Made by a program: the position numbers and the translations under genes. This document shows positions 1,174 through 58,744 of a DNA stretch of 64,000 nt, piece after piece (the stretch's first letter is position 1; the number at the start of each line of letters is the position of its first letter). The notes beneath the pieces are model-generated. The model saw only the letters and a program-made list of their open reading frames with translations, had not been told where the DNA came from and did no database searches. Source of the stretch: Ascidiella aspersa (Eukaryota); contig OZ004610.1 of NCBI GenBank assembly GCA_963924565.1, positions 31,372,001-31,436,000 of the forward strand, in the 5' to 3' direction.

Positions 1174-1400
1174 ATCAAAGCTCATACAGAAGTAGGTAGC
1201 ATTTTGAACGTTTAGAATAAACCTTTATTCCTTTTCAACACCATAAATGAATAAAAAGTGTTTAAAATTTTATTCAACATGTAATGTCGATGTTTTAAAT
1301 GAATAAAGGGTTACTCGAAACGTTAAAAATGCAACCTACTTCTGTATGGGCTTTGATATTCTTGCTACGTCTTACTACAACCTCCAACAATTATGCTTCA
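1174..1400. mobile_element. Palindromic repeat family C with hammerhead-like 3' half
   Basis: Inverted arms 1174-1240 and 1295-1358 with stem GAATAAA/TTTATTC followed by GAAACGTT. Second copy at 15215-15335. Confidence 0.55.
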
Positions 1401-7715: not shown

Positions 7716-10700
7716 ATGCGTCGGATTTTCACCGATCGTCCGCCGAGAGACTTTCTACTCCTCCGAGTTCTCCTGCTCGCCGTTACGTCATGTCTAGTGA
7801 CGTCATCCAGTGGCTCCAAGGCGCTCAAGCTGTCTGTGAAAGAGAACACCGCGATCGGTAAGCGGAAGCCAGATTTGTCACAAGGCCAGGCGCCTGACGA
7901 GGCTTTAAAAAATAGGTCGTCTTTTTTTCGAGCGATTGAATTCATTTGGCAGACAATCTGACGCGATTGCCTTTTTATCGTTTCCGTTAGATTTTAAGGT
8001 TTATATTTAGAACTTCCTGAAGGGCCACGGCCGCCAAATTTTGACCAGCAAATAGTCTGGTTAACTTAGGGGTTCATAAGTGTTAAATTAAAAATAAACG
8101 TTTTTGCATTGGATGTATATTTAGACTCTTTTGCGCTTTCACATTTGTTTTGCCGAAAACAGCAGATTTTTTAAGTCTATCAATTTATGACTTCATCTCT
8201 AAAGTTTATTGCCTAAACTGGTCGAGCAAAGCAATTTTTTTAGAGGTCTGCGGTAAAAAAAAGTTCAAGAATCCCTGAGTTAACTGATTAGGTTCTGACG
8301 AAAAGTTGTGTAGCCCTGAAAAGTAAAGTGCCAGTTCTAACGCATCATCCTTCCTCCAATCCAACAGGTACCACGGTGGTTGAGCTAGCCGACATACTGG
8401 ACATACAGACCAGCTCTAAGAAGACCTTCCAGCTGCTGGACGAGAAACTGAAGTCAGTTGGCTACAAGTCGGCAAGTCGTCGCAATCGCAAGTGGCTGGC
8501 ACTGGACGAAAGCTCTGGAAGACTGACCGTTCGCCACCCGCTAAACCGCGAGGAAATGTGCCGGGACTCGAGGCGATGTGTTATTCTTATGCAGGTGTGG
8601 AGCACTTAGAATTGTCAGTTTAGTTTAACGATCACTAACATTCGTCGAAGGATTCACTGAACTGTCGAAGCTACAAAAATATACAAAGTACCTAAATCAA
8701 GCTTTCGCACAACCGCGCTTCATCAACAAAAAGTAGAAATAAATACTTTTGACCTGATGAAGCACGGTTGTGCAAAATCTTGTCAAGAATCAACACAATT
8801 TGTCTTTATATATTGCGATTTTAATATTAGGTCTTTATGTATGTCTTTCAAAACATTTTAATCATGATCTCGATATTGGCACTAAAAATGTTACTTAACC
8901 AAGTGATTTTATTCAACCGTGCTTCATCAGGTCAAAGTAGAAATATTAGGCAAACACTGCCATATACAAAGATCAGGTTTTGTCAGTTCACGGCCGATCT
9001 ACAGCAGTCGTTTTTTTGGGGTATAGCGCAAAAACAAAAAGCCGTCATATTGAAGTGCTCTGTATTATTCTAACGCCCGGCTCTCGTTTTGTTTCTCTCC
9101 TTTTGGCGAAACAGATCTACGTGCGAACCGATTTCCGCATGGTCAATCTCGAGATCGCGGTGTTGGACGTAAACGAGCACGCGCCCGTCTTTCCAGTGCG
9201 CTTCGCCCTGCTGAACGTGAGCGAAGAGGCACAGAAGGGAGACCTGTTCAGTCTCGACCGTTACCTGGCTCGGGACCGCGACGCAGGTAAAAACAACTCA
9301 CGATTTTTTTACCCTGACTGGGTAAAATTTAGGAACAAAAACCTACTGAAGCTTTGTGTTTTTGCTACACAACACAAATCAGGTTTCTAATTTGGACAAA
9401 GCATAGAAAATCTGTAAATTCCTTCTTTTCTGTGGAATGTAGAGATGCATTGATATAGAATGAATGCTTTGATATTCAACCATGCCAAGCAACTATTAGT
9501 TTATCTGCTTTGTTGTGTCAAATGCACAGAAATGTTGCCGGCCTTTTTTACCCTGACCATTTGGTCGCCTTATGTGGCCGTTTAAAGTGGGCCGTAACGT
9601 TTATTTAACATCGCTCAAGTGTCTTTTCACATATAGTTAATTACACCTTATTTATTGTTGCGTGCATTTATTCTGGCCACTTGGATTTAGAAACTCCGAA
9701 GCGAAAGCGAAATTGAAAGAGGTTGTATGTTGTTGCAACTATTAATAAAGCTACGCGCTAAAAATCTAGTTATCTGGGGATTTATCCGTTATGTCGCGGC
9801 CTTTGTGAAGATATTTAAAATATTGTTACAACTGTATTGCACATCTGCTGCTTTTTGCTGTTAACCTATTCAGCCTTGACCGATACCGACACCGTGACGC
9901 AGGTAATAACAGCGACCGCAAGCAATATACGCTCACGACGCCACTTTTCGCCGGCGTGTTGCTGTAATGAATAATGCACGGCTACTGACATATGCTTGCG
10001 TGCAGGTTTGACAAAATTTATTCTGTTCCAGGCAACAACTCGCAGATCACCTACGCACTGAGCCCGAGCAATTACTTCGCTCTGATCCAGTCGAGTGATG
10101 AAACGGGAAGCCAGCATCTGCAGCTTCAAGTCAAACGCGCCCTCGGTGAGTTTCTTCTCCCAGTTTCTTCGTGTTTTCTGTCGCCGCGTCGTAATCGGAT
10201 ATCGCATGTCAAGTGACCGTGTTTGTGGCTTGCCCCCTCTTCTTGAAACCGCGCCGTCGCCCAATCTCGAACGCTTGAAATTTAACGTGACGAGGGTTCT
10301 TCTGGGCTAACTGCAAGGGGGGCTTGGGTAAATGAAGACGCTAAAAATCTTCGCACGGCTTTCGACTGTCAATGTCGGCCACTCGATCCGAACTGAGCGC
10401 GATTAAATGCTCTGTCCTTAACCCTGAATGCCTTACATCGCGCGCAGGAGACGTGCAACTAATTGTATCTTTTTGTCTTGCGTTGCGCAGATTTCGAACG
10501 AAAGGCTGTCTTCCACTTGATGCTTAGCGCTGAGGACCGAGGCGAACCAGCGCTCTCAAGTAAAGTGCCGCTGCAAGTTCGAATCATCGACGAAAACGAC
10601 AACAGACCAATGTTCGACCAGGAGGTAAGTTATCACCACCGCGAAAATTAGACGCACCGATGTTTGAACGTATCGTGTCGCATGTAACATTATCGCCAAT

Positions 10701-13700: not shown

Positions 13701-16700
13701 TCCACAACATAACCTTGCCATCCAACAGAACTCATATTGCCGACGATAAAAGTTCTAAAAGTTTATAATAGCTTGAGAAGAGCACCGCCTTAAACAAATG
13801 TCAGTCAGCAAGGTCTAAAAACTTTTAATAAAAATGCATTTCGCCATATAAATGAATGGCATTATCAGTTTATCTTGTTCAAATAGAATTTTTTTATTTG
13901 GCGAAATGCATTTTTATTAAAAGTTTTTAGACCTTGCTGTCTGATTTTTGTTCGATACGGTGCGCTTCTCAAGCTGTGATACTTTTAATTCTAAGACGCA
14001 AAACCAAATCGCAAGCAACAACATATAGTAAAATCTCTTTCGCCACCAGGTGACCATCATTGCGTCCGACGGCGGTCGCAAGAGTGCGCTCAGGAGCAGC
14101 TGCGAGCTGATAGTGACAGTGGCCGACTCGAACGACAACGCGCCGGTTTTCACCAACCCGGCCCGTGACGACATGACAATCTACGCAACCATCGTGCGTG
14201 ATGACGTCATCACACGTATACAGGCGGTGGATTATGACGTAGGAGCGAACGGCGCGGTCAAGTACCGTTTGACGAAGGAGGACGGGGTGCTGATCACCGG
14301 TTTTGTCAACTCGTCCCTGTTTATCGTTAACTCGACGACCGGTGATTTGAGGTTGAACATGAGCACGCCAAACTTGAGTCAGTCACTCGGCGAACATGCA
14401 ATCGAAATCGAGGTGTGTATATTACTATTTAAAACAAACTTGGTATACTTTTCAACAACGAGTCTTGCCTTTCATTTGAGCATATTACGCCGGCGATAAA
14501 AATTATAAAATTTTAATAAGCTTGAGAAGTGCATCGCTTCGAATCAAAATCAGCCAGAAGCTGTAAACCCTATTGAAATACAAAACATGCATTTTGAAGC
14601 GGGCGCTTCTCAAGCTTATTGAAAATAAATGTGCAAATTACTATACCGACATGCTTTATGGTATAATGCTGGGAAAAAATTGCCGGAGAACAACTATTGA
14701 CTCGATGTGAAAAACTTCAGGAGCGATAGACCGTAGTGAAGTATTAACGTTTCCACCTTAAGCAACTTACTTTAGCGATTTTGTTACGATGACAAAGCAA
14801 ATTTAACGCTTGACTTGTTACAACTCACCAGGCGCGTGACGGCGGCCAGCCAAGCATGAAGAGTCAGCGACGCGTGACCGTGATCGTGACCGACCAGATT
14901 GTGCTTCCGACTGTGTTCGCGATGCAAGAGGAGGTCACACCCTTCACCGCCAACTCTTCATTCATTATCATCATAGCTGCTCTTTCCTCCGCTCTGGCGC
15001 TCCTTTTCCTTGTCTCTGTGGTGGTTGTGTGCAGATGCAGAAGGGAAAATAAGGTGAGGACATTTTGATCACTGTTTCGTTAAAGGTGTTTAATTAAAAT
15101 ACAACAGCTTACTCCCTTTTTCAGTAAAGGTTTTTATCTTACCTATACGCAAGTTACGCATTACTGAAAAAGAAGTAAGCTGTTGTATATTAATCTTTAC
15201 AAGTAATAATCATTTCAAAGCCCATACAGAAGGTATAGCTCAAATAATTATTCGAAACGTTTAAAATGCTACCTACTTCTGTATGGGCTTCGATATTTTA
15301 TTACGTCTTACTACAAACTCCAACCATTATGCTCCAATCTTAACAAGCTTTCTCACAACCGTGCTTCATCAGGTCAAAGCAAGACCTTAGTAAGCATTAC
15401 AATATAATTTGTTTAAAATGTTTATATTTTTGTTGTACAGGTCGAAATGTTTTCGCGATAAAATTAGTGAAAGTTATCAAAAAATTATAAACAAGCCAGA
15501 TAATAACTTTATCCTTCGAATGACGAGTCTGATTGTAATTTCTGTCGGCTTGATTTGTGTACATTACTTTTAAAACGCCGAAAAAACAGTTTTTACGTTT
15601 CCTGAATATACTCTTCGGCGATCAGCCACTTAACTGCTTTCCCAACCTTTTAAAATCGTATCGCCATGCTGAAATCGCACTGACGCTGTAAAGCAAGGCT
15701 GCCCAGTGCTCATATAGCTAACAGAAAACGCATCACTGTAACTGCCTTCATATAACGTTTCTATTCCTTACTCCAATCGCAGAAAGTGCGAACGTACACA
15801 TGCAGCAAAGCGCACGAGGACAGGCGCAGCTCGGCTGATGTCCTGCACGAAAAACCTGCGGATCTGACCCGATCCACCTCAAAAGAAAGTCTAAAGGGTA
15901 GCATCGCTTGGAGCCAATCGTCCAACAAAAGGTAAACGATACATAAAGAACATTTTATCTCTAAAAATTCGCATATCTACCTATAGCCACACCCTTACAT
16001 ACGCGAAGTCCAGGTCTGTGTCGTTAAACCAGGCGTAATGAACTTCGCTTTTGTCCAACAGGCAGCACTCCTTGACGTACGACTCGACCACGGACGTGAC
16101 CAACCTGTCAAGAAGCGACGCGGTCGTGTCTCGCCAATTCACAAGCTCCGGAGCGAGTCTAGAAGGACAGAATGCAACGTTACTCAGTGGACAGGTGGGC
16201 TGGCAGATAATGATAGTTGCTTCCGGGAGGTTATATTTCTAGCATTATTTGAGTTACGTTGCAAGTTAAGGTTTGGGTTTGTCAAGTTTTTTATTCTCTT
16301 ATATTTTTTTTCTTTCTTGCGATTTCAATTTTGATAACTGGTTTAGTTACTGTAAAACAATTGGTTGAATTCTAGACCAGTGCCACTTTCTAAATATACA
16401 GTCCTGGTTACCACTTTATACAGTATTCCTAAAACGAATTTCCTCACTATTTATGAAACGACTTTAACCTTATAAATTTATACGTCAGGAGATTTACCAT
16501 TGCATCTGCCGATTACTAGCGATCCTTTGTGCCACAGTTATGTTTATGTATTAGATTATAACCTGATACAATTTGCATTGGCAGAGCGCTACCAGCAACC
16601 TAAAAGATCGACCGCTGGCCTCATCATCACACCACCACGAAGGTGACAGCGGTCACGGCGACAGCGAGCCTGACGTCACCAGTGGTGACGTGTCGTTTGA

Positions 16701-18228: not shown

Positions 18229-21114
18229 ACACTTCGACGCGATTTCAGCGTTTAAACAACAGCGCGCAGTTTTGTGTTTGGAACTGAGGACAGGCAGCAT
18301 GACGAAGGTAGCTAAAAACTAGTGGATCCGATACTGAAGTCGTTATCAGTTTGCAGGAATATATTACTAAAACACAAGCTTAAACAAGTGGATTTATATA
18401 TTGTGAACATAGAAAACAAAACAATGTTATTCAATTGGAAACAGAATCAGTGTAAGTTAAACGTCATTGCCAAACACTTACAAGTAACTAACAGGGCGAG
18501 ATCCTATTGCTACAAAGTAGTAACACTAACAGCCGTAAACACAACTACAATTCCAAGGCACCATGTGCTCAGTGACCTTTGGCCGTTTGACCGCAAGTAA
18601 TAGAATGCTTACACAGTTAAGTCATAAAGCACTTACACCAAAATGCGCAAGGTTAACATTAGTTTGGAATATTTGTAAATGTATTTTTTGTTTAATTCCG
18701 TATTTGTTTAATTCTAAATAGGGTCATCAGGTTGCATTATATAAAGACAAAAAAAGTAGAAATGAAAACCATTAAAATACACGGAGTAGAAGCACAATAG
18801 CTATAAACGTAAAACAAGTTTTAAATAAATCAATCAAATTTACTTTTTTTGTGCAACTATCAAAAAACAACTTTAAATCAATCACTATGAGGTTTCAGTA
18901 AGCTTTTAAAATCAATTTCAACACCAGGCTCAAAACCGGCAATTCAATTACTTGTTTGTCTGGCCCAGTAATTCATCTGACAATAACAAACGGAAATTGG
19001 ACAGACATTGCCCAATCAAAAATAATGGAAAGTGGATCAAAACAATAGAAGGTCGTCGAGTGTCCTGACGCAAGAAAAATTAACCCTGCCCACTTAATGC
19101 AATCGAAGCGGCATCAAACAAAAGACATGTGCGCACACCGCTGCTCGTATCCTATATTTATTCTCCCCAAGATCGTTTCAAATAATCCACCACCTCCTTT
19201 CTAAGGCAATTTTCCCACTGTAAATTAATTCGACGTCATCTAATAAGCTCGAGAGCTGTAATAACGAGATTAAAACCTATATGAAAGTAAACTTTGTGGT
19301 GATTCTACCACCAGACAAGTACTGGCACCAGTGGGTTATGGTAGACATGGATGGACTGAAGATTTAAGCAGTAATTTTGGCTTGGTAGAAAACTAAATAG
19401 GCTGTTTTCGGATTTATTAGTTGTTTTTAGGTATAAACGATCAGAAGTTGAGATTTTCCCTAGGCCCATTTCCCTGAAATCACTTTTTTCGGTGTTTTCT
19501 GCGCTAGTTTGGCAACACATGTGGAAATCAATCCTAGAACGTTTTTTTCAGATAAGTGTTTCACTACGAAGTCAGTAAGTCACAAAAGTGAAAGCAAAAG
19601 CATTTTTTTATGTGTTTGGTTATAATAACATATATATATACCACTTTCTTCAGTGACGGATCCACTGTACCAGTCGTGTCCCCTCCAAACTATTTTGGCC
19701 CATCATCTGTCTTTCCCGTATATTTTAAGCGCTTTTTAGGATCTTTACAGACAAATGGCGCCTTCAGTACTGCAGCATTCTTTTCATTCTTGCGCTTCGA
19801 TCAAATATATTCATTCGTTAAAAATGAACAAAATGATCATACCAGCCGTTTTTTTAATATTTCATAAGTTCTAATTCTCACTTTTTTTAACCTGATTTAG
19901 TTGATGCCATTTTCGTGTTTCACCCGAATTACACCGCCTTTGCATCTGGCCATGCACTCTATCGTAAGTAACAAACCTGCAACTTAAAACTCCAAAACGT
20001 TAAAAAGTTAATTAGAGTTTTAAACACTTGTTTGTCGTGTAACTCGCAGCTGTTCGATCAACGACCCTCACAACTTGAAAAATTTTAATATATTGAACAA
20101 TATGCGTACATTTTATCTGTGCTCAATGCGTCAGTTATCCCTTAAATCTCAATTTAAAATTGAGTTTTAAACCAAATAGCCGCAATTATTTCGTGCTTCG
20201 CGCGACGCACTCGCCTTTCTTAAAACTGGACTTCAGTTCCACGTTTGCACAGAACTGTGATCCCAACGTAATGACAGGCTTCGTAAGCCAGTGCTCTTTA
20301 ACCAAGTGTACTTTATTCTGTATATATATGTACCAGAACCAGATCAAATCTGGGTTGTACAACTGACAAAAGTGTGCGTGAGTACACGGATTCGGTCAGT
20401 GTTAGTGCATGCCACAACTTCGAAAGAATACACAACTGTGCCCAAATCGCCCTGGTTTTGTAGCCAGATATAATAACCAACTACCCCACTAGTTATTATT
20501 TTTTAACTTCTGTGTATGGATCGATTCAGTGTGAACAAAGTCACAATATAAGGAAATAAAGGAAACATATAACACTGGTGTTTGTGAAACATACAGCTGT
20601 TAGTTAAACGGCTCATAACTTGTTTTTTATATACTCGATCCTTGAAATAAAAAGTTTGGCAAGTTAAACCTAATAATGGCAAAAAATAATTGCGAACGCT
20701 TTCCCTTTTTCCATGTATTTTAATTAGATTTGTCTAACGCGCACGAGTTTGGCCGAGAACGGCAATTTCAAAGAGTCACTTGTCTTATGGTATCACGTTT
20801 TATCGTAAATTTGTGAAGTCATATTTTAATTTTTATTCATTCCTTTTGCATTACTATTGGTGAGGTGCACAAAGTAAAGAACGGAGATAGCAGTTAAAGA
20901 GCACTGTCGTAAGCTGGCTTTGTTTCACAGTGTCGCAGTATGACGCCATTTTGTCTGCATTTCAGACACTATTTTTGACCCGGCCTCAACATTTCGTTTC
21001 TTTTGGGCCGCTCTAGAAATAAATTCCCCACCCCATAACTTACTTTCGATTTTCATAACTACTTTTCAGCAGAAATATCCTTTGCGACGTTCGGACGATT
21101 TCAATAAACTAAGA

Positions 21115-22400: not shown

Positions 22401-22848
22401 GATTACTAAAGGATACGGTGTAAGTTAAACGTTTTGTCAACAGAAACCAAATAGGCGCATTTATTTACTTAGCTTAAGCTGCATAGTTTTACACCAGCTA
22501 TTTCGAGAACAGCACGCTTGGTAAGACTATACTTAAATTAGTGCGTCACGTTATGACGTAAATTGTGACGTCATTTGTAAGAATTTATATATGCCCCTCA
22601 AAAAACTAAAATCCTTGATCCGCCCCTGCAACATTGGCCAGTCATATGAAACAAATGCCACTGATCGCCCGCGAAAAAATAAATTCGGATCACGATAATC
22701 TGAACAAAAGTTTTTCCACTAGGCACATTTTATAATCCCTTAGACAAATTTTATATTTTTTGCAAAAAAAATTGATGTTTTAACTAAAACGAAGGAAAGT
22801 TTAAACATTTTCTAAAATTTTATGACAGTATATTTCAGGAAGTAAAAA

Positions 22849-25800
22849 ATGAAAATAGCAATCATATTGTTGCTACTTGTTTGCATCAGTCTTTGGAAAA
22901 CCACTAAAGCCAAAGGCATTCCGACAAATAATAATGAATTATCAGAGAGCTTCATAAACAGTGGTTCTTCTGGAAGCGTTGAAGATAATGATGGATCTCC
23001 TGTAGGATCTACAAATGGTGGGTCTCCTGGAAGCGTTGAAGATAATGATAGATCTCCTGTAGGATCTACAAATAGTGGGTCTCCTGCAAGCGAGGAAGAT
23101 AATGATGGATCTCCTGTAGAATCTACAAATAGTGGGTCTCCTGCAAGCGTTGAAGATAATGATGGATCTCCTGTAGGATCTACAGAGAGTGGATCTCCTG
23201 GAAGCATTGAAGATAATGATGGATCTCCTGTAGGATCTACAAAGAGTGGTTCTCCTGAAAGCGTTGAAGATAATGATGGATCTCCTGTAGGATCTACAAA
23301 GAGTGGGTCTCCTGGAAGCATTGAAGATAATGATGGATCTCCTGTAGGATCTACAAAGAGTGGTTCTCCTGAAAGCGTTGAAGATAATGATGGATCTCCT
23401 GTAGGATCTACAAAGAGTGGTTCTCCTGAAAGCGTTGAAGATAATGATGGATCTCCTGTAGGATCTACAAAGAGTGGTTCTCCTGGAAGCGTTGAAGATA
23501 ATGATGGATCTCCTGTAGGATCTACAAATGGTGGGTCTCGTGGAAGCGTTGAAGATAATGATGGATCTCCTGTAGGATCTACAAATGGTGGGTCTCCTGG
23601 AAGCGTTGAAGATAACGATGGATCTCCTGTAGGATCTACAAATGGTGGGTCTCCTGGAAGCGTTGAAGATAACGATGGATCTCCTGTAGGATCTACAAAG
23701 AGTGGATCTCCTGAAAGCGAGGAAGATAATGATGGGTCTCCTGTAAGATCTACAGAGAGTGGGTCTCGTGGAAGCGTTGAAGATAATGATGGATCTCCTG
23801 TAGGATCTACAGAGAGTGGATCTCCTGGAAGCATTGAAGATAATGATGGATCTCCTGTAGGATCTACAAAGAGTGGTTCTCCTGAAAGCGAGGAAGGTAA
23901 TGATGGGTCTCCTGTAGGATCTACAGAGAGTGGGTCTCCTGGAAGCATTGAAGATAATGATGGATCTCCTGTAGGATCTACAAAGAGTGGTTCTCCTGGA
24001 AGCGTTGAAGATAACAATGGATCTCCTGTAGGATCTACAAATGGTGGGTCTCCTGGAAGCGTTGAAGATAACGATGGATCTCCTGTAGGATCTACAAATG
24101 GTGGGTCTCCTGGAAGCGTTGAAGATAACGATGGATCTCCTGTAGGATCTACAAAGAGTGGATCTCCTGAAAGCGAGGAAGATAATGATGGGTCTCCTGT
24201 AGGATCTACAGAGAGTGGGTCTCCTGGAAGCATTGAAGATAATGATGGATCTCCTGTAGGATCTACAAATGGTGGGTCTCCTGGAAGCGTTGAAGATAAC
24301 GATGTATCTCCTGTACGATCTACAAATGGTGGGTCTCCTGGAAGCGTTGAAGATAACGATGGATCTCCTGTAGGATCTACAAATGGTGGGTCTCCTGGAA
24401 GCGTTGAAGATAACGATGGATCTCCTGTAGGATCTACAAATGGTGGGTCTCCTGGAAGCGTTGAAGATAACGATGGATCTCCTGTAGGATCTACAAATAG
24501 TGGGTCTCCTGCAAGCGTTGAAGATAACGATGGATCTCCTGTAGGATCTACAAATGGTGGGTCTCCTGGAAGCGTTGAAGATAACGATGGATCTCCTGTA
24601 GGATCTACAAAGAGTGGATCTCCTGTAGGATCTACAAATAGTGGTTCTCCTGCAAGCGTTGAAGATAATGATGAATCTCCTGTAGGATCTACAAATAGTG
24701 GGTCTCCTGCAAGCGTTGAAGATAATGATGGATCTCCTGTAGGATCCACAAAGAGTGGATCTCCTGGAAGCGTTGAAGATAACGATGGATCTCCTGTAGG
24801 ATCCACAAAGATTGGGTCTCCTGTGGGATCTACAAAGAGTGGTTCTCCTAAAAGTGATGAAGATAATGATGGATCTTCTGTAGGATCTACAAAGAGTGGA
24901 TCTCCTAAAAGTGATGAAGATAATGATGGATCTTCTGTAGGATTTACAAAGAGTGGGTCTCCTAAAAACGATAAAGATAATAATGAATCAACAAAGACTG
25001 GATCTCCTGGAAGCAATAAAGATAATGATGGATCGCCTAAAAGCGCAACAAATAGTGGATCTCCCAAAGGTGATAAAGAAAACACTACATCTCCTAGAAG
25101 TACAAAAGATAACATTGGATCTTCTGGAAGCGCAACAAAAAGTGGATCTCCTAAAGGTGATAAAGATAATAATGGATCTTCTGTAGGATCTACAAAGAGT
25201 GGATCTCCTAGAAGTACAAAAGATAACAGTGGGTCTTCTGGAAGCGCAACAAATAGTGGATCCCCTAAGGGTGACAAAGGAAATAATAGTTCTCCTGGAA
25301 ACGCATCTCCTTCGAGCACAAAACAGAGTACATCTCTTGCCAGCCATACAAAGACCACTAAATGCCATGATGGTACAACACATAGTAGTGCATCTTCAAT
25401 GGACGACAACACTAGTGGATCACCGGGTAGCACAAAAGATAAGAGTGGATCTCACAAAAGTAGCTCAGACGGCTCTAAAAGTAGCAAAGACAACAAGAGT
25501 GAAAGTCCGAAGTCGCCTTCGCCACACCCAAATCACTCCAGTTCCAACAAGCATGGTAAATTGCATGCATTGAAACGTCTTAACTTAAATTTCGGGTGTA
25601 AACTAAGGGCTTATACTTCCATATTATATAATCCAAGTGGCACGTATTTTTCGAATGGCCTTTTGTTTTGTGGACAAACAACTTTTTATGGCTCTCTTTT
25701 TATAAATAACCCAGAAAAGGGAGTTTCTAAACCTTTAAACGCTGTTCATTTTTGCGTTAAGTTAAGATAAACATATGTAAATTAAAACGTATATAGCCCA

Positions 25801-32400: not shown

Positions 32401-35400
32401 CGAATTATTTATATATTTTTTAAAATCTTTTTAATAGTGTCTGGTCTGAATAGCTATCTTGGTTAGATTTTGTTTCTGTTTCAAAAAAAGCAACAAGTAA
32501 AGTAGGTTAAAAACGACGCGGAATGTACGACGACTGATTCACAGTGGATTCTTTAAGGCTTTTAAACGGAGTAACAATACGTAATTTAACCAAGCCTATT
32601 TTAAAATATACTTTTGCTGCCAGGCATTGTTTCAATTGTAAAATTGCTCTTCCGGCAAAATTGTTCTTTCCGTTGGTAAAATTTTGCCGAAAGAACAATT
32701 TAACAATTGACAAAACTAAAAATGTTTTTCAACACAATGAGAAGATAAAACATGTTAATAAACTACGAACCGCTTTATCGAACCATGTACATTTTGTTAC
32801 AAGCAAAATATTGTTTTTATTTTTAGTGACAAGCCGGAAAATGGTGTAGAGGTGGATCTATCGATCAACCTCAATCTTACTGGCGGCGAATACTCAGGTA
32901 AGAAAACGATTTCATCGAGTCACACTATATAAAACCAGGGATGCGGAGTCGGTTAATTATAACCGGCTTAAAATAAACCTGAGGCTCAGGTAGTTTAACG
33001 TGGAACTACTACTAAAACCAGGGCTGCCCAGTTATCATTGAATCACTTTGTACAAATTACTCTGTTTTTCTAAATGAGAATTTTAAAGGTATTTTGTCGG
33101 CCTGGCCTAACCTCTAGCAAAAGAGATATTTGCAAAACAGCTTTTAAAATTATCTGTTTTAATATATTTTTTCAATTGCAAATTAAAATTGGGTAAACGT
33201 ACCGGATTAAACGCACCACGGGCGCGAATTCACATGTAAACATTATTTTGCAGTAAATGCTTAATGTTATTTGCTTTAGGATAACGTCAAACAACTGCTG
33301 TGGATGGGTCACTTTGCAATTTTACCAAACAAGTCTAGATACGCTAACCTTCGGTTTTATGTTGTTGTACAGTTTGGGACAAAGTTTTAGCTGTCAAGAT
33401 TGGCGGACAGCTTTACTGCTCAAGAATCGGCATCAAGGATAGCGAGGGTTTGCAACAGATCAAGTGGCGGTTCCCTTGCAGTATGGGAAGAAATGGAGAT
33501 TGGTACGACTAACTTTTCCTAAAACACTTATTTGCGCTGCGTTAACGTAGAGTAACTAAAGGGATTTTTGTAGTAACGGGGAATTTAAACTGATTGATTC
33601 AAGTTCGGATAACGGCAAAGATTTTGCACTCATTTCAAACATACCTTAATTATTTCTTTCCGTGAGTAATGTCGGATTCTGTTTTTACTCGGGTTTTTAA
33701 GCTTTGAGTTTTATTGTTAACATACGCATCAGCGGAACAGTGATCGACAAACTTAAACCTGCTGCCAATGGTTTTGGATTTCATAGAGATACGCCCTTTA
33801 ACACATTACTTATTTGTTAGCACGCCAAAATAGTCAGGGGCCATGCAGTAAATATGTCCGTTGAACTACAGGGGCTCGTTCGCTGACGCATTGAATGCGG
33901 CGGGATTGTCTATGAATGTGATACAGCCAGTTACATACAACGGAGAGTGGATTAGTGAAGGGGAAGATGGCTGCTGCTTCACGAAAATGCTCATACAAAA
34001 AAGCATCAGTAAGCGTTCGCATTCGAATCTAACGTTATTTTTACTGAAAGACATCATATCTGTAAAGGGATACGCTATGCACGGGTCTGTAATGTAGTTT
34101 GATAATAATAAATGGCAAAGCCAATAAAGTTAAGATCTTAATTAAGACGTTTCAAAACGAATTGTATAATCTTTAGTTAGTGTCATCTTCAGTTAAACAT
34201 GAACTAAAGATAATACAATCTCGTATCAAAACGTTTTAATTAAGATGATGTCGATCTACTTACCCTTTTTGGCTTTGTAGCCTAATTCATTATCAAACTA
34301 AATATTTACAAAGTTTACACCTTGTTCATACCATTTTTGTGGCCTTATTTCTAATTCTAAATAGGGTAATCAGGTGGCACTATATTAACACAAATTGTAT
34401 TGATTTTTGACAAGCTTTCGTAAACCGTGGTTCATCAGCGTTTTACTTGACCTGATGAAGCATGGTTGTGCGTAAGCTTTTAGAGAATTTAATACAATTT
34501 GTCTTTACATAGTGCCACCTGATTACATTGTTCATAGTTAAATATATAGTTCAGCCACAAACACAAATGATTAACGCAAAACCTTCGGTCGTCTGTACCA
34601 CCTGGATAAAGTAAGAATGTTTCGAAAAGCTTTATCTTTACGTATGGGTGTCGTTTTTTATCATGAAAGTTTTAAGTTAAGTTCTATCTAAATTTTTGTA
34701 ACCTCGACAGTTCCGAATCGAAGATATTGGTAATAAATTTCTACTTAAAAAACGATTATTTGGTTGTCAGGTCCGCACACAAGCATTTAAAATAAATCAC
34801 TAATCATGTATAAGATCGACCGAGTTGGATTTTAAAGACACAATGGATCACAACATTTTTTGACAACTGGCTTGAAACACACAAATACATGTCTGTGATT
34901 TATAAAAAAAACAGTCGCTAAGTGTCGCGCGAGTGCAATACAAAGTTCGATTAAAAAAACAGCATTATAACAAAAAAACAGTAAATAAAAGATTGGATTT
35001 TAAATTTAAATATTAAATCGAATCGGTAAATAAGCTTTTAAATTTGATTTCGTGATTGATTTGAAATAATGGACAGATTTATAATATTCCCCGATTTATT
35101 TTTTTTAGATAAGGCAGATAAGGATCTGATCAACAACGCAGCACAACCCGGCAAATTCGGCGTTTACTCAGCGACCAACATTTGCAAAGTCTATTTTGGA
35201 AATTCGGGTAAGACCTGTTTGGAAAATACGTTTTATCATAATATATACGCACCTTAAAAAAAACTTTAAAATATTTATACATTTTTTTGAAACGAACCAA
35301 GGAACTCTTGCGCGATTTCAGGGGTTGTTTCTTGTCGCTTGAAACATTTAAAAAATCCAATAAAAAACTTGCTTAAAAACAATCCTTGTTTCAATATTAA

Positions 35401-43049: not shown

Positions 43050-44861
43050 CTATAAGCCCCATGGCCTCCACATACCGCCCTGTTGCAAGTTCTCGACCTT
43101 TATGGAAACGCCCTTCGATAAAACACGGCCGTTGTTGGCGGAAGCTTGCTCTGTTTTGGAGATTGGCGATGGAGGGTTTGAACCCGAAGACCAGTGGCCC
43201 GAGTCGCTGCTTACGTAATGATAGTGAGCGCTATCCTTGAGAAAACGGGGCTTGCGTTCAACGACCGGGGTAACAGGGGAGAATAACGACCCTGTGTTGG
43301 GGCAGGGGGGTTCGTGTGTTGCGTCTCCAATAGAGTCCTGTGACGTAGACGAGAGGCTGGGTGACGCGATTTGGCGGTAAGCTCCCGGCGAAACAGTGGA
43401 TGGGTTGGAGATAGGCGACACTGGAACTGGCGAAAAGGGGCTGGCGCTGTGAAGGGCGGGTGGGCTCGCGGCCAGCGACAAGTTCTGCGTGCTGCTGCTG
43501 ACGTCAGCCGCTAGGTATGACGTCACGTTACCGAATGAGGCTCCGCTGTCGTCCATGGCGACGCGGCCTTGCGCCCGTCTGCGCAGGTCTAGCTCGGTGA
43601 TGAGACGCTTTGGGAATGGTTGGACTTGCGGTGGTGGATGGCCGCGCTTTCGTTTAACAGCACGAGGTGCTTCTACCGCGGAATTGCATCTGTTGGTGAG
43701 GTGGACTAACAACTGAGTGCGACAGCCCGGTGAAATTCCATCTTGGCTATGGCTCATGTAAGCAGCCACGTCCCTCACACATTGCTCGTAACCGGCACGA
43801 CGCTGGTTTACGGCGCCGGAGTCTGAGTCGTCATTGGCCGCTGCTACGCTGCTGATGTCTTCATTGCAGCTGATCGACAAATCTGTATTAGAAATAAACG
43901 TTTAGTTTAATAAAGAATACTACATTGGAGTTTGGTATTAAAATATATCCTATAGTTCTTATTATATTTTGCTAACTAAACCACGTTAGATATCGCGGTT
44001 AAATACAAGACTTCGTTAGAGCTGGTTGACAAATCTGCGTTAGGGATAAACGTTTAGTTAAATGCAGAATATGATCCTAGTTCCAGTATTATATTCGCTT
44101 AACTAAGCGCGTTCGTTATCGCAGTTAAATACGACCACAGGATGATTACGATTTTTTTAATTACTATAGTGCTATCAATGATGTGGAATAAAGATCATGG
44201 TTGGTCATTTGATAAGCAGATATTTTCGTATATGAACATGTACTCACCGATTGCTAAAGGCTTCGTAGTTTGAACGCTCTTCAAATATCGAACAGTCATT
44301 TCCAGAATATCTGCTTTCTCCAGTTTGTTGGGTCGAGACTAAATATAGCAAAAATAAGTTTTAAAATTTAGCCAAGCAAGTTATTATAATGAAAATATTT
44401 CAGAACTGATAATAATTAATGTACGTTAAAACATATATTTTAAAGTACTTACGTCTTCGGATACTGATTTCAAAACGATCGACTTTAAATCTTCGAGGCA
44501 GTTATTGATGCGTTCGCGGCGCTTCTTTTCCATGATTGGTTTGTTGGTCTAAAACAAAAATAATTCGTTACTACAATGGTCGAATCTGTTTGTTTAAAAG
44601 GAATAAACTTAAAAAATACATACAAGTACTGTTATACTATCAGCTAATTAGGGTAATCAATTGGTACTGTATAAAAACAAATTGTATTAAATTCTTGACA
44701 AGCTTTCGCACAACCGCTTATCGAGAATTGATAATTTTTTTCTATATAGTGCCAACTGATGAACCTATTTATAGAACTACGTTCATATACAAAGATTTAT
44801 GAGCTAAGAATCTCACCTTGCGTCGCATTTCAGCGTCAGTCATTCTTCTCTCTGGGGGCAT
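43050..44861 (-). CDS. Hes: Hairy/E(spl)-family bHLH-Orange transcriptional repressor, 4 exons, ~354 aa
   Basis: Minus-strand exons 44817-44861 (MPPERRMTDAEMRRK), 44453-44548 (TNKPIMEKKRRERINNCLEDLKSIVL), 44248-44338 (KLEKADILEMTVRYLK), 43050-43882 (Orange domain AGYEQCVRDVAAYM...LLVHL; ends WRPWGL*). Basic-region Pro and intron positions are typical of Hes genes. Minus-strand AATAAA at 42739-42744. Confidence 0.95.
44648..44773. mobile_element. Family A palindromic repeat (partial hammerhead) in Hes intron 1
   Basis: Matches the arms at 34351-34535 but retains only the GTGCGAAAGCTTGTCAAG half. Confidence 0.7.
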
Positions 44862-50790: not shown

Positions 50791-50995
50791 AAGTACCAAC
50801 GTTTCGACAACCTATTCGTGCAATCTTCTTAAGGGCACTATAATTGCAAATATAGGCGAAAAAAAAAAAATATATATATACCAGAGAAACAATAAAGAAA
50901 AATAAATTAGAAACGTGTGCCATTCTATTTTCCTTTATTGGCTGTCTGTTATATATATTTTTCGCCTATAGTTGCAATTATACTGCCCTGAAAAA
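50791..50995. mobile_element. Palindromic hammerhead-like repeat, family B
   Basis: Inverted arms about 50831-50905 and 50925-50992. The minus arm reads AGTGCC CTTAAGA A GATTGC-loop-GTTGTC GAAACGTT GGTACT and the plus arm supplies CCCTGAA. Related inverted copy at 63791-63875. Confidence 0.6.
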
Positions 50996-52178: not shown

Positions 52179-53757
52179 CCTATAAAAAGGCTACCTGACT
52201 TGTTTTAGCAAGAGTCACGATATGAAAAGTACGTACTTTTTATCGGGTCCGGTCAATTCGGTCAAATATTTTGAAAATGGACGCAACAGGTCTTAAAAGC
52301 ACAAGGTGGTTTATCGTTTTAATAGTCACCTCTTTGAGGAATTTGTCTCTCTTTATTGCTTTAAAATGCAAAGTTCTTGCTATCTTTTTAGTAAACTGGA
52401 TACATCGTAAAGTCCAAATCAACTTTATTTTATACATAGTTTCGCTGGTGTCACATAGCATAACATATGGACATTTGTTCTGTAGGCTTCCAGCACTAAT
52501 ATTTAATTTACAACTGCACGATTAAACCTACTATAGAAATTGATTGATAAGTAGTGTGCGTTTGCATCGTTGAACGATCCAAGTTGTTATCTATTCAAAA
52601 ACTTTTACGAGTTAACACACAGCTGATAGCAGTAACTGGTTATCGGTTGTGGCACAATATCATCGCACTTTTATTTAGAAAGTCAGTAGTTGTAGGCTAC
52701 GAAAATAGAAACAGTTTGAAAAAGTTTCAACAAGCCGTAGGATTTTATGTCTTTCTATATTTAGTCAATATTGATATGGTATAATTGTGGCGGGACATGT
52801 GCGTACGATTTCTATGTTGTTTACGCGTTTTGCGTGTTGTTTACGTCGCAATTACGATCGGGATCAAAACAAGTTCGCTGTCCGCCTTGAATGCTGCGCT
52901 GACCTCGATTCACGATCTGATATCGCGCGCTGGACACAAGAGTTGCGCGGCGGCGGTAATTAGAGAGCCGTCGTACGACCCGGTCGTTACGGGGCAACTG
53001 CAGGTATTCTTACCCCACCACGTCTCGAAGCAGCGAAAGCGAAAGGCAAAAGTTGCCAGTTGGGCTTGCGCCGTTTGTCGCAAGTCAGCGGGCGAGGCCT
53101 CGACCGGCATAATTTGTTATTGCAATGTCGCGCGCACACGGGTAAGTTCGCGCGGAGGGTGGCAATTAGCGTGCCGCGCCGCAGTACCCCTTTCATTGTG
53201 ACAGCAATTTGAGGGTCTGGACCTGAAGACGAAAGCGGCAAACAACACGTTTCGAAAGCGGCGCAAATATTATGACAAGGCTGAAAGATCTTGGGCCGGG
53301 TAATATGTTGTTGCTAGTTGTTAGCCAATTTGGGCGGTCGCAGTCATTTTCGGTGAGCGAAAACGGATAAATGAATTTGCAAAAAATAGAGGGGAAAGAG
53401 AAGATTTACAACGGCAGTGTGATTTCAGTCTTGGGCTTGTACAGAAGTGGGGTTTATCAGTAAACACAAAAACAAAGCATTTTTCTAAGAAAACAATTAA
53501 AATCCAACATCCATCGCTTAAGGTTCACGCTAGGCCAAAATCCAAGCCTTAAGCACGTTTTTGACTTTTCAAGGTCAAGGAGAGGTCACCGCGTGGCAAG
53601 TGATAGTTGTGCGATTTCCGAGAGATGATTTCAAAGCCGCTAATTTCAACTTAAAGCTATGTAATGAAATGCGGGGTAAGTACCTCGCACATTCGATGCT
53701 GTTTTGATAAGAATGACTACTTGAGAAAAATCTTTGTATACGGCTGTATTTGTCCTA

Positions 53758-53868
53758 ATTCTAAATAGAGAAATCAGGTGGCACTGTATAAAGACAAATT
53801 GTATTTGATTTGTCGAGAATCAAATACAATTTGTCTTTATACAGTGCCACCTGATTTCTCTACTTGAA
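53758..53868. mobile_element. Family A palindromic repeat (outer arms only)
   Basis: Near-perfect inverted repeat gagaaatcaggtggcactgtataaagacaaattgtatttgatt / aatcaaatacaatttgtctttatacagtgccacctgatttctc. Confidence 0.8.
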
Positions 53869-56412
53869 AAAAATACAGGTCTTTAAAGCCGTTTATTATC
53901 TCGGTTCCACAGCATTGTGCGCCCTGTGATTTAATTAACCCACTTTTAACAGTATGTAAAAAAAACAGCAAAATCAACTTATTGATAAAATAACGCGTTC
54001 ACATTTATAATTTATTTAATTTTTTTTCTGTGTTTTCTTTTTATGCAGTTACAATTTCTTAATATATTTTTCTTACGAATAGGGGAGTCAATGCCCCCGC
54101 TGTCAATTGTCTGTCGACGAACAAGGTACAGCAAGCTCCTATGGTTTCAAAAATATTCATTTCATACACCTTGTAATTAAACGGCAAATATAACGGCAAA
54201 CAAAAATAAAGGTGAAAAAATTGTTTAAAAGAGCAAACCCTCTTAACTTAACGAGATGTGCTGTATACCAATTTGGGTGTGCTTATCATGTTCACAACAC
54301 GCGCTTTAATTAAATTTCAATACAATTCACATTTTTTCACTATACCAAAACAAAACCATATCCAGGTTTAACACAACTGCTAGAACGCTTAACGGTTGCC
54401 AAATAACTAGAAATGCGTGATCCGAGTTTAAAAGAAGGTTCCCTAACCATATCTGGCGTGGCGGATATAATTTAAATCTTCCAACGTGAGCAAAATGTAT
54501 TTTTAACATGTACTAAATAGTAATTACATTGCCTAAATAAACGAAGGTTTGTGGTGACAAAAACTCACCCGTTGCTATAGCATATCATATATACACTAAA
54601 TTGCAGCGTAATAAAATACCTTGCGTATAGTGGAAACAATTTTAACTGTCATTCCACCCCCATTTTCAATCCACATCGCAAATTATCACAAATATAGACC
54701 GCAGTTACTGAAGTTACTATTTGATTTGTTGATACACATTACCACTCTACCCAAAAGTTTAGACCGCAGTAAAACATAAGATTGTAAATTAACCAGTTGT
54801 ATTTCATTTTTGATCTACACTAGCAACACTAAGTTACCAAAAGTGTGAATCGCAGTAAAACCAAATTTGCAAATTTTAACAGTTGTAAGACTAAAGTTAG
54901 TATCTAAATTGCCCAAAATGTGGCCCGCGGTAACAAAAAAATAGCCCATAGCATGCGTCGCGAGTTCTATTTCCGGGTCAAAATTTTTCGGGTTGTAAAG
55001 CAACCGCAATGCACATAAAAAACGGCGAGGGAGCTCAAGTGAACGGTTTCAGGAAGCGAGTTTTCAAATTCGTTTTGCAAACTTTTTCTTTTTGTATTTG
55101 AGAAACAACAAACGTGATTCTCATACCTCCTATTTACGTTTGATTATTTTTGTGATGTTTATCGTTATTTACACGTTACATTTATTCGTCCAGAATATCA
55201 ACAGAGATTACCAAGTTATCAAAAATATAGAGCGCAATTACCCAAGTTGCGATTTTATTTTTGTATGAACACTACCACACTACCAAAAGTTTGGTCCGCA
55301 GTAAAACATAAGATGTTAAATCAACCAGTTGTGTTTCATTTTTGATCTACACTAGCAAGTTACTAAAAGTGTGGAACGCAGTAAAACCAATTTTGCGAAC
55401 TTTAACTGTTGTAAAGTTATTATCTAAATTGCCGAAAATGTGGACCACGGAAAAAAGGCCCATCGCATGCGTCGCGAGTACAATTTCCGGGTTACAATTC
55501 TTCGGGTTGTAAAGCGACCGCGAAGCACATCAAAAACGGCGAGCGCGCGCAATTGAACGGTTTCAGGAAGCGAGTCCACGCTGGGCGTTCGCGGTCGCCG
55601 GCCAACTTCAAAGTCGCGTTAATCCCGAGGGGCGCATAAGTCGTGCTCGAAACTGTGGCAGCGAGCGAAAAAAACGAAGGCTCCATTCAGTTCAACCCCG
55701 ATACGCGCGCGCGCAAACGCCCGGGATATGTTTGTGCAGTCATAAAACGGTCAGCGTACGCCCATTCGCGTATTGTCGACGGGATTATTAACTTGGCGTG
55801 CGGCGCGACGCACGGCCATCGTGAACTGGGTCGTCGTCGCAATAAACGTCAGCGAACGAAGCTCGGCGGGTCGCCCAGTCATCTCGCAACTTGAAATTGA
55901 GTCATCACTACCGAATTATGTCACATCGACAACGCCCTATCACGCTTCGTTGTCGCAACTTTAAACAGTGTTATGCCGGAAATAGATCGTGTATTTCACA
56001 GGGGTGAATGTTTTTAGATTGCAACGTCGTACCAATAAGAATATGGTGCCGTTATATTAAAATAACATAATTAAAGTATGACACATTGATTACACCCTAT
56101 CACACTTCGTGATTCAAACTTTAAACGGTATTAGGCCGAAAATAGATCGTGTATTTCACAGGGTTAAACGTTGATTTAACTGACACGTTGTACTAGCGAT
56201 ATAAACACGGTGCCGTTATATGGGAATAACATATCGAAGGATGACGCCTTGATTTCAGCTCCTAATGAAATTACTACCATAACGGACGAAACATTGAAAT
56301 TATTTAGGTAATTTTACTTTCAAATTAGAAACAAAAATCAAATGACTATTCCGGTTAATAAAAATTTGAAAATTATGCGTTCATTGTCTCAGGAAATTAA
56401 TTAGTTTTACTG

Positions 56413-56461
56413 ATATCACTGATGATGGCATGCGCATTTGCCGAAACGTTTGAATAATAAA
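56413..56461 (+). ncRNA. Minimal type-I hammerhead ribozyme motif with intact core, followed by AATAAA
   Basis: TCA CTGATGA T GGCA tgcgcatt TGCC GAA ACGT T TGA ... AATAAA; stem I is only 3 bp. Confidence 0.65.
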
Positions 56462-58515: not shown

Positions 58516-58744
58516 TGTCACGCCAAAATTAGTCCGGCCGGATCGATTTTGGTCGTAATCAAGCGCCAAATTGGTAAGGTCGGATCGATTTTGGCGTTGG
58601 AACAGCCGCTAAAACAGAGGTCTGGCTAGGGTTAGGGTTAGGCCGGACCAGTTTTGGCCTAGCCGGACCTGTTTTAGCGGCTGTTTCAACGCCAAAATTG
58701 ATCAGACCGGATCAGTTTTGGCCCCGGACCAAATTTCGCGTTAC
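58516..58744. mobile_element. TIR element with internal palindromic subrepeats and central GGGTTA-like tract
   Basis: Ends tgtcacgccaaaattagtccgg / ccggaccaaatttcgcgttaca; inner inverted repeat acagccgctaaaaca / tgttttagcggctgt. Confidence 0.7.

What the first reader, a model, noticed from the sequence alone, without database searches (positions are those of the whole stretch)
34351..34535. Dispersed palindromic repeat whose consensus is a perfect minimal hammerhead ribozyme (family A)
Seen: at least 7 pieces (8698-8812, 8914-8940, 15339-15379, 18708-18765, 34351-34535, 44648-44773, 53758-53868). Their consensus reads 5'-TTGAC CTGATGA A GCAC-GGTT-GTGC GAA AGCT T^GTCAA GAATCAATACAATTTGTCTTTATATAGTGCCACCTGATTACCCTATTTAGAA. 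This gives stem I TTGAC/GTCAA, the core CUGAUGA, stem II GCAC/GUGC, then GAA plus self-complementary AGCU as a vestigial stem III, with predicted cleavage after CUU. Most copies occur as head-to-head inverted pairs whose arms are truncated to different depths. Established: minimal type-I hammerheads with a palindromic mini stem III that works as a dimer occur in Penelope-like element pLTRs and retrozymes, and Penelope insertions often carry inverted, variably truncated pLTRs. Inference: these MITE-looking hairpins are footprints of a ribozyme-processed, non-autonomous retroelement system rather than DNA transposons.
Basis: partly seen in the sequence, partly recalled or inferred. Interest (0 to 1): 0.85.

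Follow-up and report, generated by a model that had tools for sequence, protein, structure and literature searches.

The report
Truncated Penelope retroelement ends carrying hammerhead motif

Summary
The window holds seven insertions of one repeat family. Their consensus contains a complete minimal type-I hammerhead: helix I of 6 bp, CUGAUGA, an unpaired A, helix II GCAC/GUGC, GAA, a palindromic AGCU and U17. The genome has 315 exact and 1,390 near-exact copies of the 31-nt motif, against 0 for the control. No window copy keeps an intact core.

[quoted passage not shown] Family A is therefore the 3' end of a canonical Penelope-like element (PLE).

Insertions show the published PLE signature:
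- a head-to-head pair of 5'-truncated copies;
- exactly one arm with a ~33-nt tail;
- variable 7-13 bp target duplications (PMC8557442, PMC11167929).

This rules out a MITE or DNA transposon. It also does not support a separate non-autonomous or retrozyme system. Arms form a length continuum up to 2.3 kb, no unit-length tandem arrays were seen, and RNA reads show no ends at the cut site.

It is a new member of a known kind. Other first-stage readers noted the same class elsewhere in this genome.

The parts
34322..34330 (.). Left target-site duplication TTGTTCATA of the focal insertion
   Evidence: Exact 9-bp repeat at both edges
34331..34438 (-). Tail-bearing arm of the focal insertion (refA ~622-737, decayed tail). 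Hammerhead remnant at 34412-34438 with a broken helix II.
   Evidence: BLAST to refA 85.6%; motif scan
34441..34527 (+). Tail-less arm of the focal insertion (refA 610-~697). Hammerhead remnant at 34447-34485 with A13>T and a damaged helix I.
34528..34536 (.). Right target-site duplication TTGTTCATA
8698..8816 (.). Old head-to-head pair: 8698-8746(-) with C3>T, and 8748-8816(+) with G12>A. No tail is left on either arm.
8914..8971 (.). Pair made of a 31-nt inverted hammerhead fragment (8914-8944, -) joined to a 27-nt tail-only arm (8945-8971, +)
15343..15382 (-). Solo 40-nt hammerhead fragment (refA 612-651) with the closing pair of helix II mutated (GTGA)
18687..18796 (-). Single-orientation copy (refA 578-618 joined to 668-733) that lacks the hammerhead segment refA 619-667
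44648..44797 (.). Head-to-head pair: tail-less arm 44648-44716(-) and tail-bearing arm 44716-44797(+). Imperfect 10-bp duplication TATCAGCTAA / TATGAGCTAA at 44638-44647 and 44798-44807.
53730..53859 (.). Young pair (97-98% to refA): tail-bearing arm (-) to 53810 and tail-less arm (+) from 53810. Both are truncated at or after the cut site, so the pair has no ribozyme core. ~13-bp duplication CTACTTGA(G)AAAAA at 53717-53729 and 53860-53872.
   Evidence: (I6)

Best explanation
Family A is the 3'-terminal ~130 nt of a canonical, endonuclease-bearing Penelope-like retrotransposon. Each hairpin is one retrotransposition event.

Proposed mechanism (inferred): the element's GIY-YIG nuclease nicks both target strands 7-13 bp apart. 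Each 3'-OH primes reverse transcription of element RNA from one of two neighbouring internal start sites. One site gives the arm with the ~33-nt tail (ending ...CAAAGATT) and the other gives the arm ending ~30 nt earlier (...CCTGATTTCTCTAT). The two minus-strand cDNAs stop early and are joined head to head.

The hammerhead (helix I UUUGAC/GUCGAG, CUGAUGA, A, helix II GCAC-GGUU-GUGC, GAA, AGCU, U17, then the cut) lies ~90 nt from the 3' end, so it is carried into most short copies as cargo. In the source element it is presumably a dimer- or protein-assisted ribozyme acting on multimeric or read-through transcripts. In these insertions it is a decaying relic.

Shown here: the element's identity, the insertion architecture, and motif conservation. 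Inferred here: the priming scheme, by analogy with the Anolis PLE, and any catalytic activity.
For: 1. Coding link. Longer copies run without a break from the hammerhead and tail into an ORF. L042:1498-2859(-) encodes 453 aa with RVT_1 at 35.7 bits (cut-off 29.6) and GIY-YIG at 31.6 bits (cut-off 22.6). The L032 arm ends in the same GIY-YIG domain.

2. Architecture. All 60 loci from two samples, including duplicate and overlapping loci, have exactly one tail-bearing arm. The 30 hairpin-selected loci (about 24 distinct insertions) were not chosen for the tail; the 30 tail-selected loci carry it by construction. Tail-less arms mostly end at refA 688-709. Target duplications of at least 7 bp flank 25 of 27 analysable insertions, mostly 12-13 bp and of variable length. 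Three window copies show them too.

3. Abundance and youth. There are 315 exact and 1,390 within-3-mismatch copies of the 31-nt hammerhead, and 154 exact tails, with 0 control hits in each search. Many copies are 97-100% identical to the reference.

4. Motif. The minimum-free-energy fold of the 46-nt unit forms helices I and II as drawn. In a pile-up of 132 arms, no site with a minor allele at 8% or more falls in refA 616-655, against 8 such sites in 656-734. At least five other recurrent families in the genome keep the same core with different helices I and II, and always with a palindromic ANNU (AGCU, ACGU, AUAU).

5. Literature match. Minimal hammerheads in PLE terminal repeats, and opposite-strand pairs 100-700 bp apart taken as truncated PLEs: PMC4209133. 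An inverted 5'-truncated copy plus a 30-40 bp tail at one end: PMC8557442. Both strands cleaved and extended, two RT start sites that define the tail, and uncleaved RNA as the template: PMC11167929.
Against: - No full-length copy and no direct pLTR-ORF-pLTR arrangement of this family was found. The longest copy is 5'-truncated just upstream of RT motif 1. Only 150 of 219 candidates were scored.
- Rfam hammerhead models do not detect the motif even at E<=10, neither in window copies nor in intact ones.
- The conservation contrast is weak (roughly p~0.05 for 0 of 40 against 8 of 79 sites).
- Self-cleavage is untested. RNA-seq run X6 shows no pile-up of read ends at the cut site, and 69% of laid reads continue into unrelated flanks, which suggests host read-through.
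- The RT was not placed on a tree, so the clade (Penelope/Poseidon, Neptune or Nematis) is open.
Confidence: 0.85

Rival explanations
1. A dedicated short non-autonomous element. In this view a discrete ~125-130-nt hammerhead-headed RNA, transcribed from its own start just upstream of helix I, is mobilised in trans by PLE proteins, in the manner of a SINE. This is.
For: Arm 5' ends cluster at refA 606-616, 0-10 nt upstream of helix I. This holds for 7 of 28 tail arms and 9 of 18 tail-less arms in the sample chosen by tail alone. In every hairpin-selected pair one arm ends at refA 602-616. Pile-up depth rises from 36 to 85 across these 11 positions. Non-autonomous PLE derivatives are known in Chlamys (PMC8557442).
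Against: Short and long arms share the same sequence, and lengths form a continuum (refA 583, 571, 570, 492, 364, 325 and into the ORF). The same hot spot would arise if RT initiated at the 5'-proximal copy of the start region on a full-length transcript and ran off the RNA's 5' end. No separate master locus or short transcript was seen.
Confidence: 0.2
2. Retrozyme-like tandem repeats whose hammerheads excise monomers that circularise. In this view the dispersed copies are retroposed circular or multimeric RNA.
For: Type-I hammerheads with palindromic helix III are typical of metazoan retrozymes. One insertion carries three tandem 46-nt hammerhead units (L031:3537-3660, L037:1550-1690).
Against: Among the 100 listed exact hammerhead hits, the only same-strand neighbours are that one 46-nt triplication, and it recurs with identical flanks, so it is one event that was later duplicated. 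Insertions have a fixed linear 3' end and no permuted junctions. RNA reads gave only a single-read 'goes back' joint.
Confidence: 0.03
3. MITE or foldback DNA transposon whose terminal inverted repeats happen to contain a hammerhead-like string.
For: The appearance is palindromic, the elements are small (150-200 bp), and they sit in AT-rich targets.
Against: The ends are asymmetric, with a tail on one side only at all 60 loci. Target duplications vary from 7 to 13 bp. Solo single-arm copies have the same 3' end (L059, L060, L061, L077). The sequence is continuous with an RT-GIY-YIG ORF. A chance hammerhead is expected about once per 20 Mb.
Confidence: 0.02

Closest known systems
Minimal hammerheads of metazoan Penelope-like elements (Cervera & de la Pena 2014, PMC4209133)
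   Same: Type-I topology, an unpaired base 5' of helix II, a helix III reduced to a small palindrome that implies dimeric action, a location in the element's terminal region, massive genomic dispersal, and frequent opposite-strand pairs from truncated copies.
   Different: Helix II is only 4 bp, against 7-8 bp in the Schistosoma min-HHRs. Helix III is the 4-nt AGCU, closer to the Drosophila, rotifer, shrimp and mosquito variants. Here the motif is seen only downstream of the ORF, because no full-length or tandem copy is available.
Canonical EN+ PLE insertion structure (Craig et al. 2021, PMC8557442; Frangieh et al. 2024, PMC11167929)
   Same: RT plus C-terminal GIY-YIG in one ORF, heavy 5' truncation, an adjacent inverted 5'-truncated copy, a 30-40 bp tail at one end only, AT-rich targets, and templates not cleaved at the hammerhead.
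   Different: Direct pseudo-LTRs or partial tandems were not observed for this family. Inner ends of the arms show a sharp hot spot just 5' of the hammerhead, which I did not find described in those papers.
Schistosoma Sm-alpha and metazoan retrozymes
   Same: Short, abundant, hammerhead-bearing repeats linked to PLE machinery.
   Different: Those are discrete units, often tandem, that yield monomeric or circular RNAs. Family A shows a truncation continuum, a linear fixed 3' end and no unit-length tandems.

Membership tests
Penelope-like element (canonical, C-terminal EN) | Single ORF with a reverse transcriptase followed by a GIY-YIG endonuclease | tested here: met
   L042 ORF of 453 aa: RVT_1 35.7 bits and GIY-YIG 31.6 bits, both above Pfam cut-offs. 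A CX4CX2CXH...H motif lies upstream of the GIY-YIG domain.
Penelope-like element (canonical, C-terminal EN) | Insertion signature: an inverted 5'-truncated copy, a 30-40 bp tail at one end only, and variable target duplications | tested here: met
   60 of 60 loci have one tail. Target duplications of 7-13 bp flank 25 of 27 analysable insertions.
Penelope-like element (canonical, C-terminal EN) | Pseudo-LTRs from full or partial tandem copies flanking the ORF | tested here: inconclusive
   No full-length or tandem copy was found among the scored candidates.
Penelope-like element (canonical, C-terminal EN) | RT groups with PLE and telomerase RTs in a phylogeny | not tested
   Only feature-based look-alikes were obtained: clusters of animal RVT_1 + GIY-YIG + HTH_animal proteins.
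Hammerhead ribozyme (type I, minimal) | Conserved core: C3 U4 G5 A6 N7 G8 A9, G12 A13 A14, A15.1-U16.1, and H17 not G | tested here: met
   Read directly in the consensus and in 315 exact genomic copies. It is not met in any window copy.
Hammerhead ribozyme (type I, minimal) | Helices I and II flank the core in type-I order | tested here: met
   The minimum-free-energy fold of the 46-nt unit gives the 6-bp helix I and 4-bp helix II. The A/G difference between subfamilies at position 1.4 keeps pairing (A-U or G-U).
Hammerhead ribozyme (type I, minimal) | Helix III, or a dimeric substitute for it | tested here: inconclusive
   Only the self-complementary AGCU is present. All recurrent sister families also carry palindromic ANNU, which fits dimer use. 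A kissing dimer cannot be scored with nearest-neighbour folding.
Hammerhead ribozyme (type I, minimal) | Match to curated Rfam hammerhead covariance models | tested here: not met
   No hammerhead hit at the gathering score or at E<=10, even on intact and tandem copies. This is expected for motifs without a helix III hairpin.
Hammerhead ribozyme (type I, minimal) | Site-specific self-cleavage | not testable with these tools
   RNA-seq shows no ends at the cut site, but a standard library is a poor assay for this.
MITE / DNA transposon | Symmetric terminal inverted repeats and a fixed-length target duplication | tested here: not met
Retrozyme | Unit-length tandem repeats and circular RNA | tested here: not met

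The most novel reading that the evidence does not exclude
The sharp clustering of arm 5' ends 0-10 nt upstream of helix I, with one arm of nearly every pair ending there, may mark the true 5' end of the template RNA. Most copies in the genome would then come from RT starting at the promoter-proximal copy of the start region and running off after ~100-130 nt. The two arms could also be copied from two RNAs held together by the palindromic helix III of the hammerhead. That would give the ribozyme motif a structural role (template dimerisation) in building the inverted pairs.
Probability: 0.12. Interest if true: 0.55.

Novelty: new member of a known kind. Interest (0 to 1): 0.25.

Why it matters
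The main value is for annotation. These ~150-200 bp hairpins look like MITEs or microRNA precursors; Rfam's only weak hits are to miRNA hairpins. Standard hammerhead models miss them, so at least 1,400 ribozyme-type motifs in this genome would go unlabelled or mislabelled. The clean 'one tail per insertion' rule and the 5'-end hot spot give genome-scale in vivo support for the two-start-site, both-strand priming scheme seen in vitro for one lizard PLE. The biology itself is already published.

Tried and rejected
- Rfam searches found no hammerhead family. I ran gathering mode on the window, E-value mode on window 8600-9000, and E-value mode on locus L037 with three intact tandem motifs. Only spurious miRNA-hairpin hits came back.
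- I looked for a full-length master using the RT part of the longest copy. Only 5'-truncated or degraded copies of this family turned up. Full-length ORFs of 848-880 aa belong to other PLE families at 34-36% identity.
Cross-family comparison therefore rests on the pattern listing, read by eye. No formal covariation count was made.
- Two large inverted spacings of hammerhead pairs (8 kb on C2) turned out to be host or other-repeat palindromes carrying one old insertion, not full-length PLEs.
- The snap-back (self-primed hairpin) model for the pairs was rejected. The second arm never includes the tail, and the two inner ends do not sum to a constant.
- Dimer folding could not be evaluated with nearest-neighbour energies because the structure is pseudoknot-like.
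- RNA evidence: runs X1, X3 and X5 are contigs of unknown kind. Only X6 is RNA. It gave no cleavage-site ends and mostly read-through reads.
- The organism's identity was not resolved, because names are coded.

Full report
**What is there**

The focal region is a 197-bp insertion at window 34331-34527, flanked by the exact 9-bp duplication TTGTTCATA. It consists of two inverted arms of one repeat.

BLAST with a young genomic copy finds seven such insertions in the window. That reference is refA, the reverse complement of L032:1612-2345 (734 nt). Five of the seven are head-to-head pairs, one is a solo fragment, and one is a single-orientation copy lacking the hammerhead segment.

The hammerhead-like pattern occurs 6 times in the window against 1.27 expected. 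A complete descriptor hits once in 20 Mb of composition-matched random sequence. The motif is therefore not chance.

Every window copy has lost at least one essential core base or a helix. The 'perfect' ribozyme exists only in the consensus and in younger copies elsewhere.

**Genome-wide picture**

The window lies on contig C4 of a 308.6-Mb eukaryotic assembly. Counts, each with 0 control hits:

| Sequence searched | Matches |
|---|---|
| 31-nt hammerhead, exact | 315 |
| 31-nt hammerhead, up to 3 mismatches | 1,390 |
| 23-nt tail, exact | 154 |

A BLAST first look with the focal hairpin flagged 1,699 candidates. Many copies are 97-100% identical to refA, so the family was active recently. Most window copies are older (82-90%), apart from the one at 53.7 kb (97-98%).

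**Identity**

Some hammerhead pairs are ~1 kb apart. Reading one of them (L032) showed that the arms continue upstream of the hammerhead into coding sequence. The frame ends in a GIY-YIG domain (Pfam 34 bits, cut-off 22.6) with the ...AVYAITCVKCPRTIYIGETG... motif and an upstream Cys/His motif.

The longest copy (L042/L050, contig C1 at 15.31 Mb) has a 453-aa ORF with RVT_1 and GIY-YIG, both above Pfam's thresholds. Upstream frames show an RT motif-1-like 'LPKIHK...PGRPIVS'.

RT followed by a C-terminal GIY-YIG in one ORF is the defining architecture of canonical EN+ Penelope-like elements (PMC8557442). The hammerhead lies ~175 nt after the stop codon and ~90 nt before the 3' end.

**Layout in refA coordinates**

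| Feature | refA position |
|---|---|
| Helix I, 5' strand | 616-621 |
| CTGATGA core | 622-628 |
| Unpaired A | 629 |
| Helix II GCAC/GTGC, loop GGTT | 630-641 |
| GAA | 642-644 |
| AGCT | 645-648 |
| T17 | 649 |
| Predicted cut | 649\|650 |
| Helix I, 3' strand | 650-655 |
| End of tail-less arms | ~688-709 |
| Tail | ~706-737 |

**Insertion architecture**

I examined two samples. Thirty loci were selected by the hairpin itself (L001-L030, about 24 distinct insertions). Thirty were selected only by the 23-nt tail (L056-L085).

- All 60 loci have exactly one arm with the ~33-nt tail, and where there is a second arm it lacks the tail. For the tail-selected half, carrying a tail is by construction.
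- In the tail-selected sample roughly 20 are inverted pairs, 7 are solo arms and 3 have long arms.
- Target duplications of at least 7 bp flank 25 of 27 analysable insertions. They are mostly 12-13 bp, of variable length, and often overlap the element end by 1-3 nt.

This matches the published PLE signature: heavy 5' truncation, an adjacent inverted 5'-truncated copy, and a 30-40-bp tail at one end only (PMC8557442). In vitro work on an Anolis PLE gives the likely cause. That enzyme cleaves and extends both target strands, and it starts reverse transcription at two neighbouring internal sites whose spacing equals the tail (PMC11167929). I take this as the mechanism here by analogy.

The DNA-transposon reading is rejected.

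**Autonomous or not**

Arm lengths form a continuum, from 22 nt of tail alone to 2.3 kb including most of the ORF. Short and long arms share the same sequence. The hairpins are therefore best read as dead-on-arrival truncated copies of an autonomous-type PLE, not as a separate non-autonomous family.

No intact full-length copy or direct pseudo-LTR arrangement was found.

Unit-length tandem arrays, expected for retrozymes, are absent among the listed hits. The only same-strand neighbours are one 46-nt triplication of the hammerhead unit, which recurs with identical flanks and so reflects one event later duplicated.

**The hammerhead**

All conserved core positions are present. The minimum-free-energy fold of the 46-nt unit forms the 6-bp helix I and 4-bp helix II. 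Helix III is only the self-complementary AGCU, as in the PLE 'min-HHRs' thought to act as dimers and found to cleave poorly in vitro (PMC4209133).

Two lines of evidence suggest selection on the motif:
- In a pile-up of 132 arms, no site with a minor allele at 8% or more lies in refA 616-655, against 8 such sites in 656-734. The one subfamily difference in helix I (A or G at position 1.4) preserves pairing. This is suggestive, not strong.
- A pattern search that excludes family A's helix II lists at least five other recurrent families with the same core. Their helices I and II differ, and each has a palindromic ANNU (ACGU or AUAU) (280 hits against 42 control). One member lies in this window at 56419-56451.

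Rfam's hammerhead models do not see any of these.

**Was the ribozyme used?**

Arms contain sequence on both sides of the predicted cut, and arm depth shows no step at 649|650. The templates were therefore not cleaved at this hammerhead.

I laid RNA-seq raw reads of the same species label (run X6) on L032:1560-2345. Coverage was low and on both strands. Of the reads, 69% ran on into unrelated sequence, which suggests host read-through of embedded copies. One variant copy's ORF part was expressed, and no place showed many molecules beginning or ending.

This parallels the Anolis study, which also saw no reads at the cut site and found hammerhead mutants to be insertion-competent (PMC11167929). 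Activity thus remains inferred.

**An extra observation**

Arm 5' ends cluster at refA 606-616, immediately upstream of helix I.

- In the tail-selected sample this holds for 7 of 28 tail arms and 9 of 18 tail-less arms.
- In the hairpin-selected pairs one arm always ends at refA 602-616 (all but one at 608-616). That is usually the tail-less arm, and the partner starts at 616-634.
- Contigs from other runs break at the same three places: the tail end, the tail-less end and this hot spot (table 7).

An RT stall at the folded ribozyme would stop the cDNA before it enters the motif from its 3' side, not after crossing it. A real RNA 5' end, such as a transcription start in the terminal region, is therefore the more likely cause. 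The RT would run off that end and jump to the other cDNA. This is inference, and it underlies the 'novel case'.

**Verdict**

The claims of a non-autonomous, ribozyme-processed system do not hold.

The finding is a new member of a well-described kind. Its value is in annotation and as genome-scale support for a recently proposed PLE priming scheme. Other first-stage notes report the same class elsewhere in this genome.

Noticed in passing
window 56419-56451 (+): A minimal hammerhead of a different family: CTGATGA-T-GGCA...TGCC-GAA-ACGT-T. It matches a recurrent family seen genome-wide (palindromic ACGU helix III).
   Followed up: partly
L031:3537-3660 and L037:1550-1690 (also L075, L084, L085): The 46-nt hammerhead unit (refA 616-661) is tandemly triplicated inside one insertion. 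The insertion sits in a larger repeat that is itself present in several inverted copies about 8 kb apart. It offers a natural multimeric hammerhead for cleavage tests.
   Followed up: partly
window 18687-18796 (-): A copy lacking refA 619-667, almost exactly the hammerhead unit that is triplicated elsewhere. The same boundaries may be prone to template slippage or switching.
   Followed up: no
refA 606-616 (for example L059, L060, L070, L076-L079): Hot spot of arm 5' ends just upstream of helix I. [quoted passage not shown]
   Followed up: partly
window ~22840-25000 (+): About 38 tandem copies of a 57-bp unit, 88-95% alike. One frame is open and encodes a Ser/Gly/Asp/Glu-rich 19-aa repeat (...SGSPGSVEDNDGSPVGSTN...). 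It is probably an exon of a repetitive secreted or structural protein.
   Followed up: no
window 1173-1358, 13764-13981, 15248-15295, 50826-50995, 58568-58718: Other short inverted-repeat elements (68-94-nt arms, 86-89% complementary), some sharing sequence with each other. No hammerhead core was seen in them. They could be other foldback, MITE or PLE families.
   Followed up: no
L035:1745-3145: One pair of target duplications (CATTTTGAA) encloses a compound insertion: a long arm, ~1 kb of unrelated sequence, and a second inverted pair. This suggests either multiple template switches in one event or insertion into the junction of an earlier pair.
   Followed up: no
L032:1560-2345 laid on runs X3 and X5: Contigs from runs labelled as two other organisms (B, C) carry this PLE at ~99% identity over 200-630 nt. 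Names are coded, so close relatives, relabelled samples or cross-contamination cannot be told apart.
   Followed up: no
L032:1936-2002 in RNA run X6: 26 reads skip 65 nt with non-canonical ends (TC..CT) and share fixed differences from L032. They most likely come from one expressed variant copy with a deletion, not from an intron.
   Followed up: no
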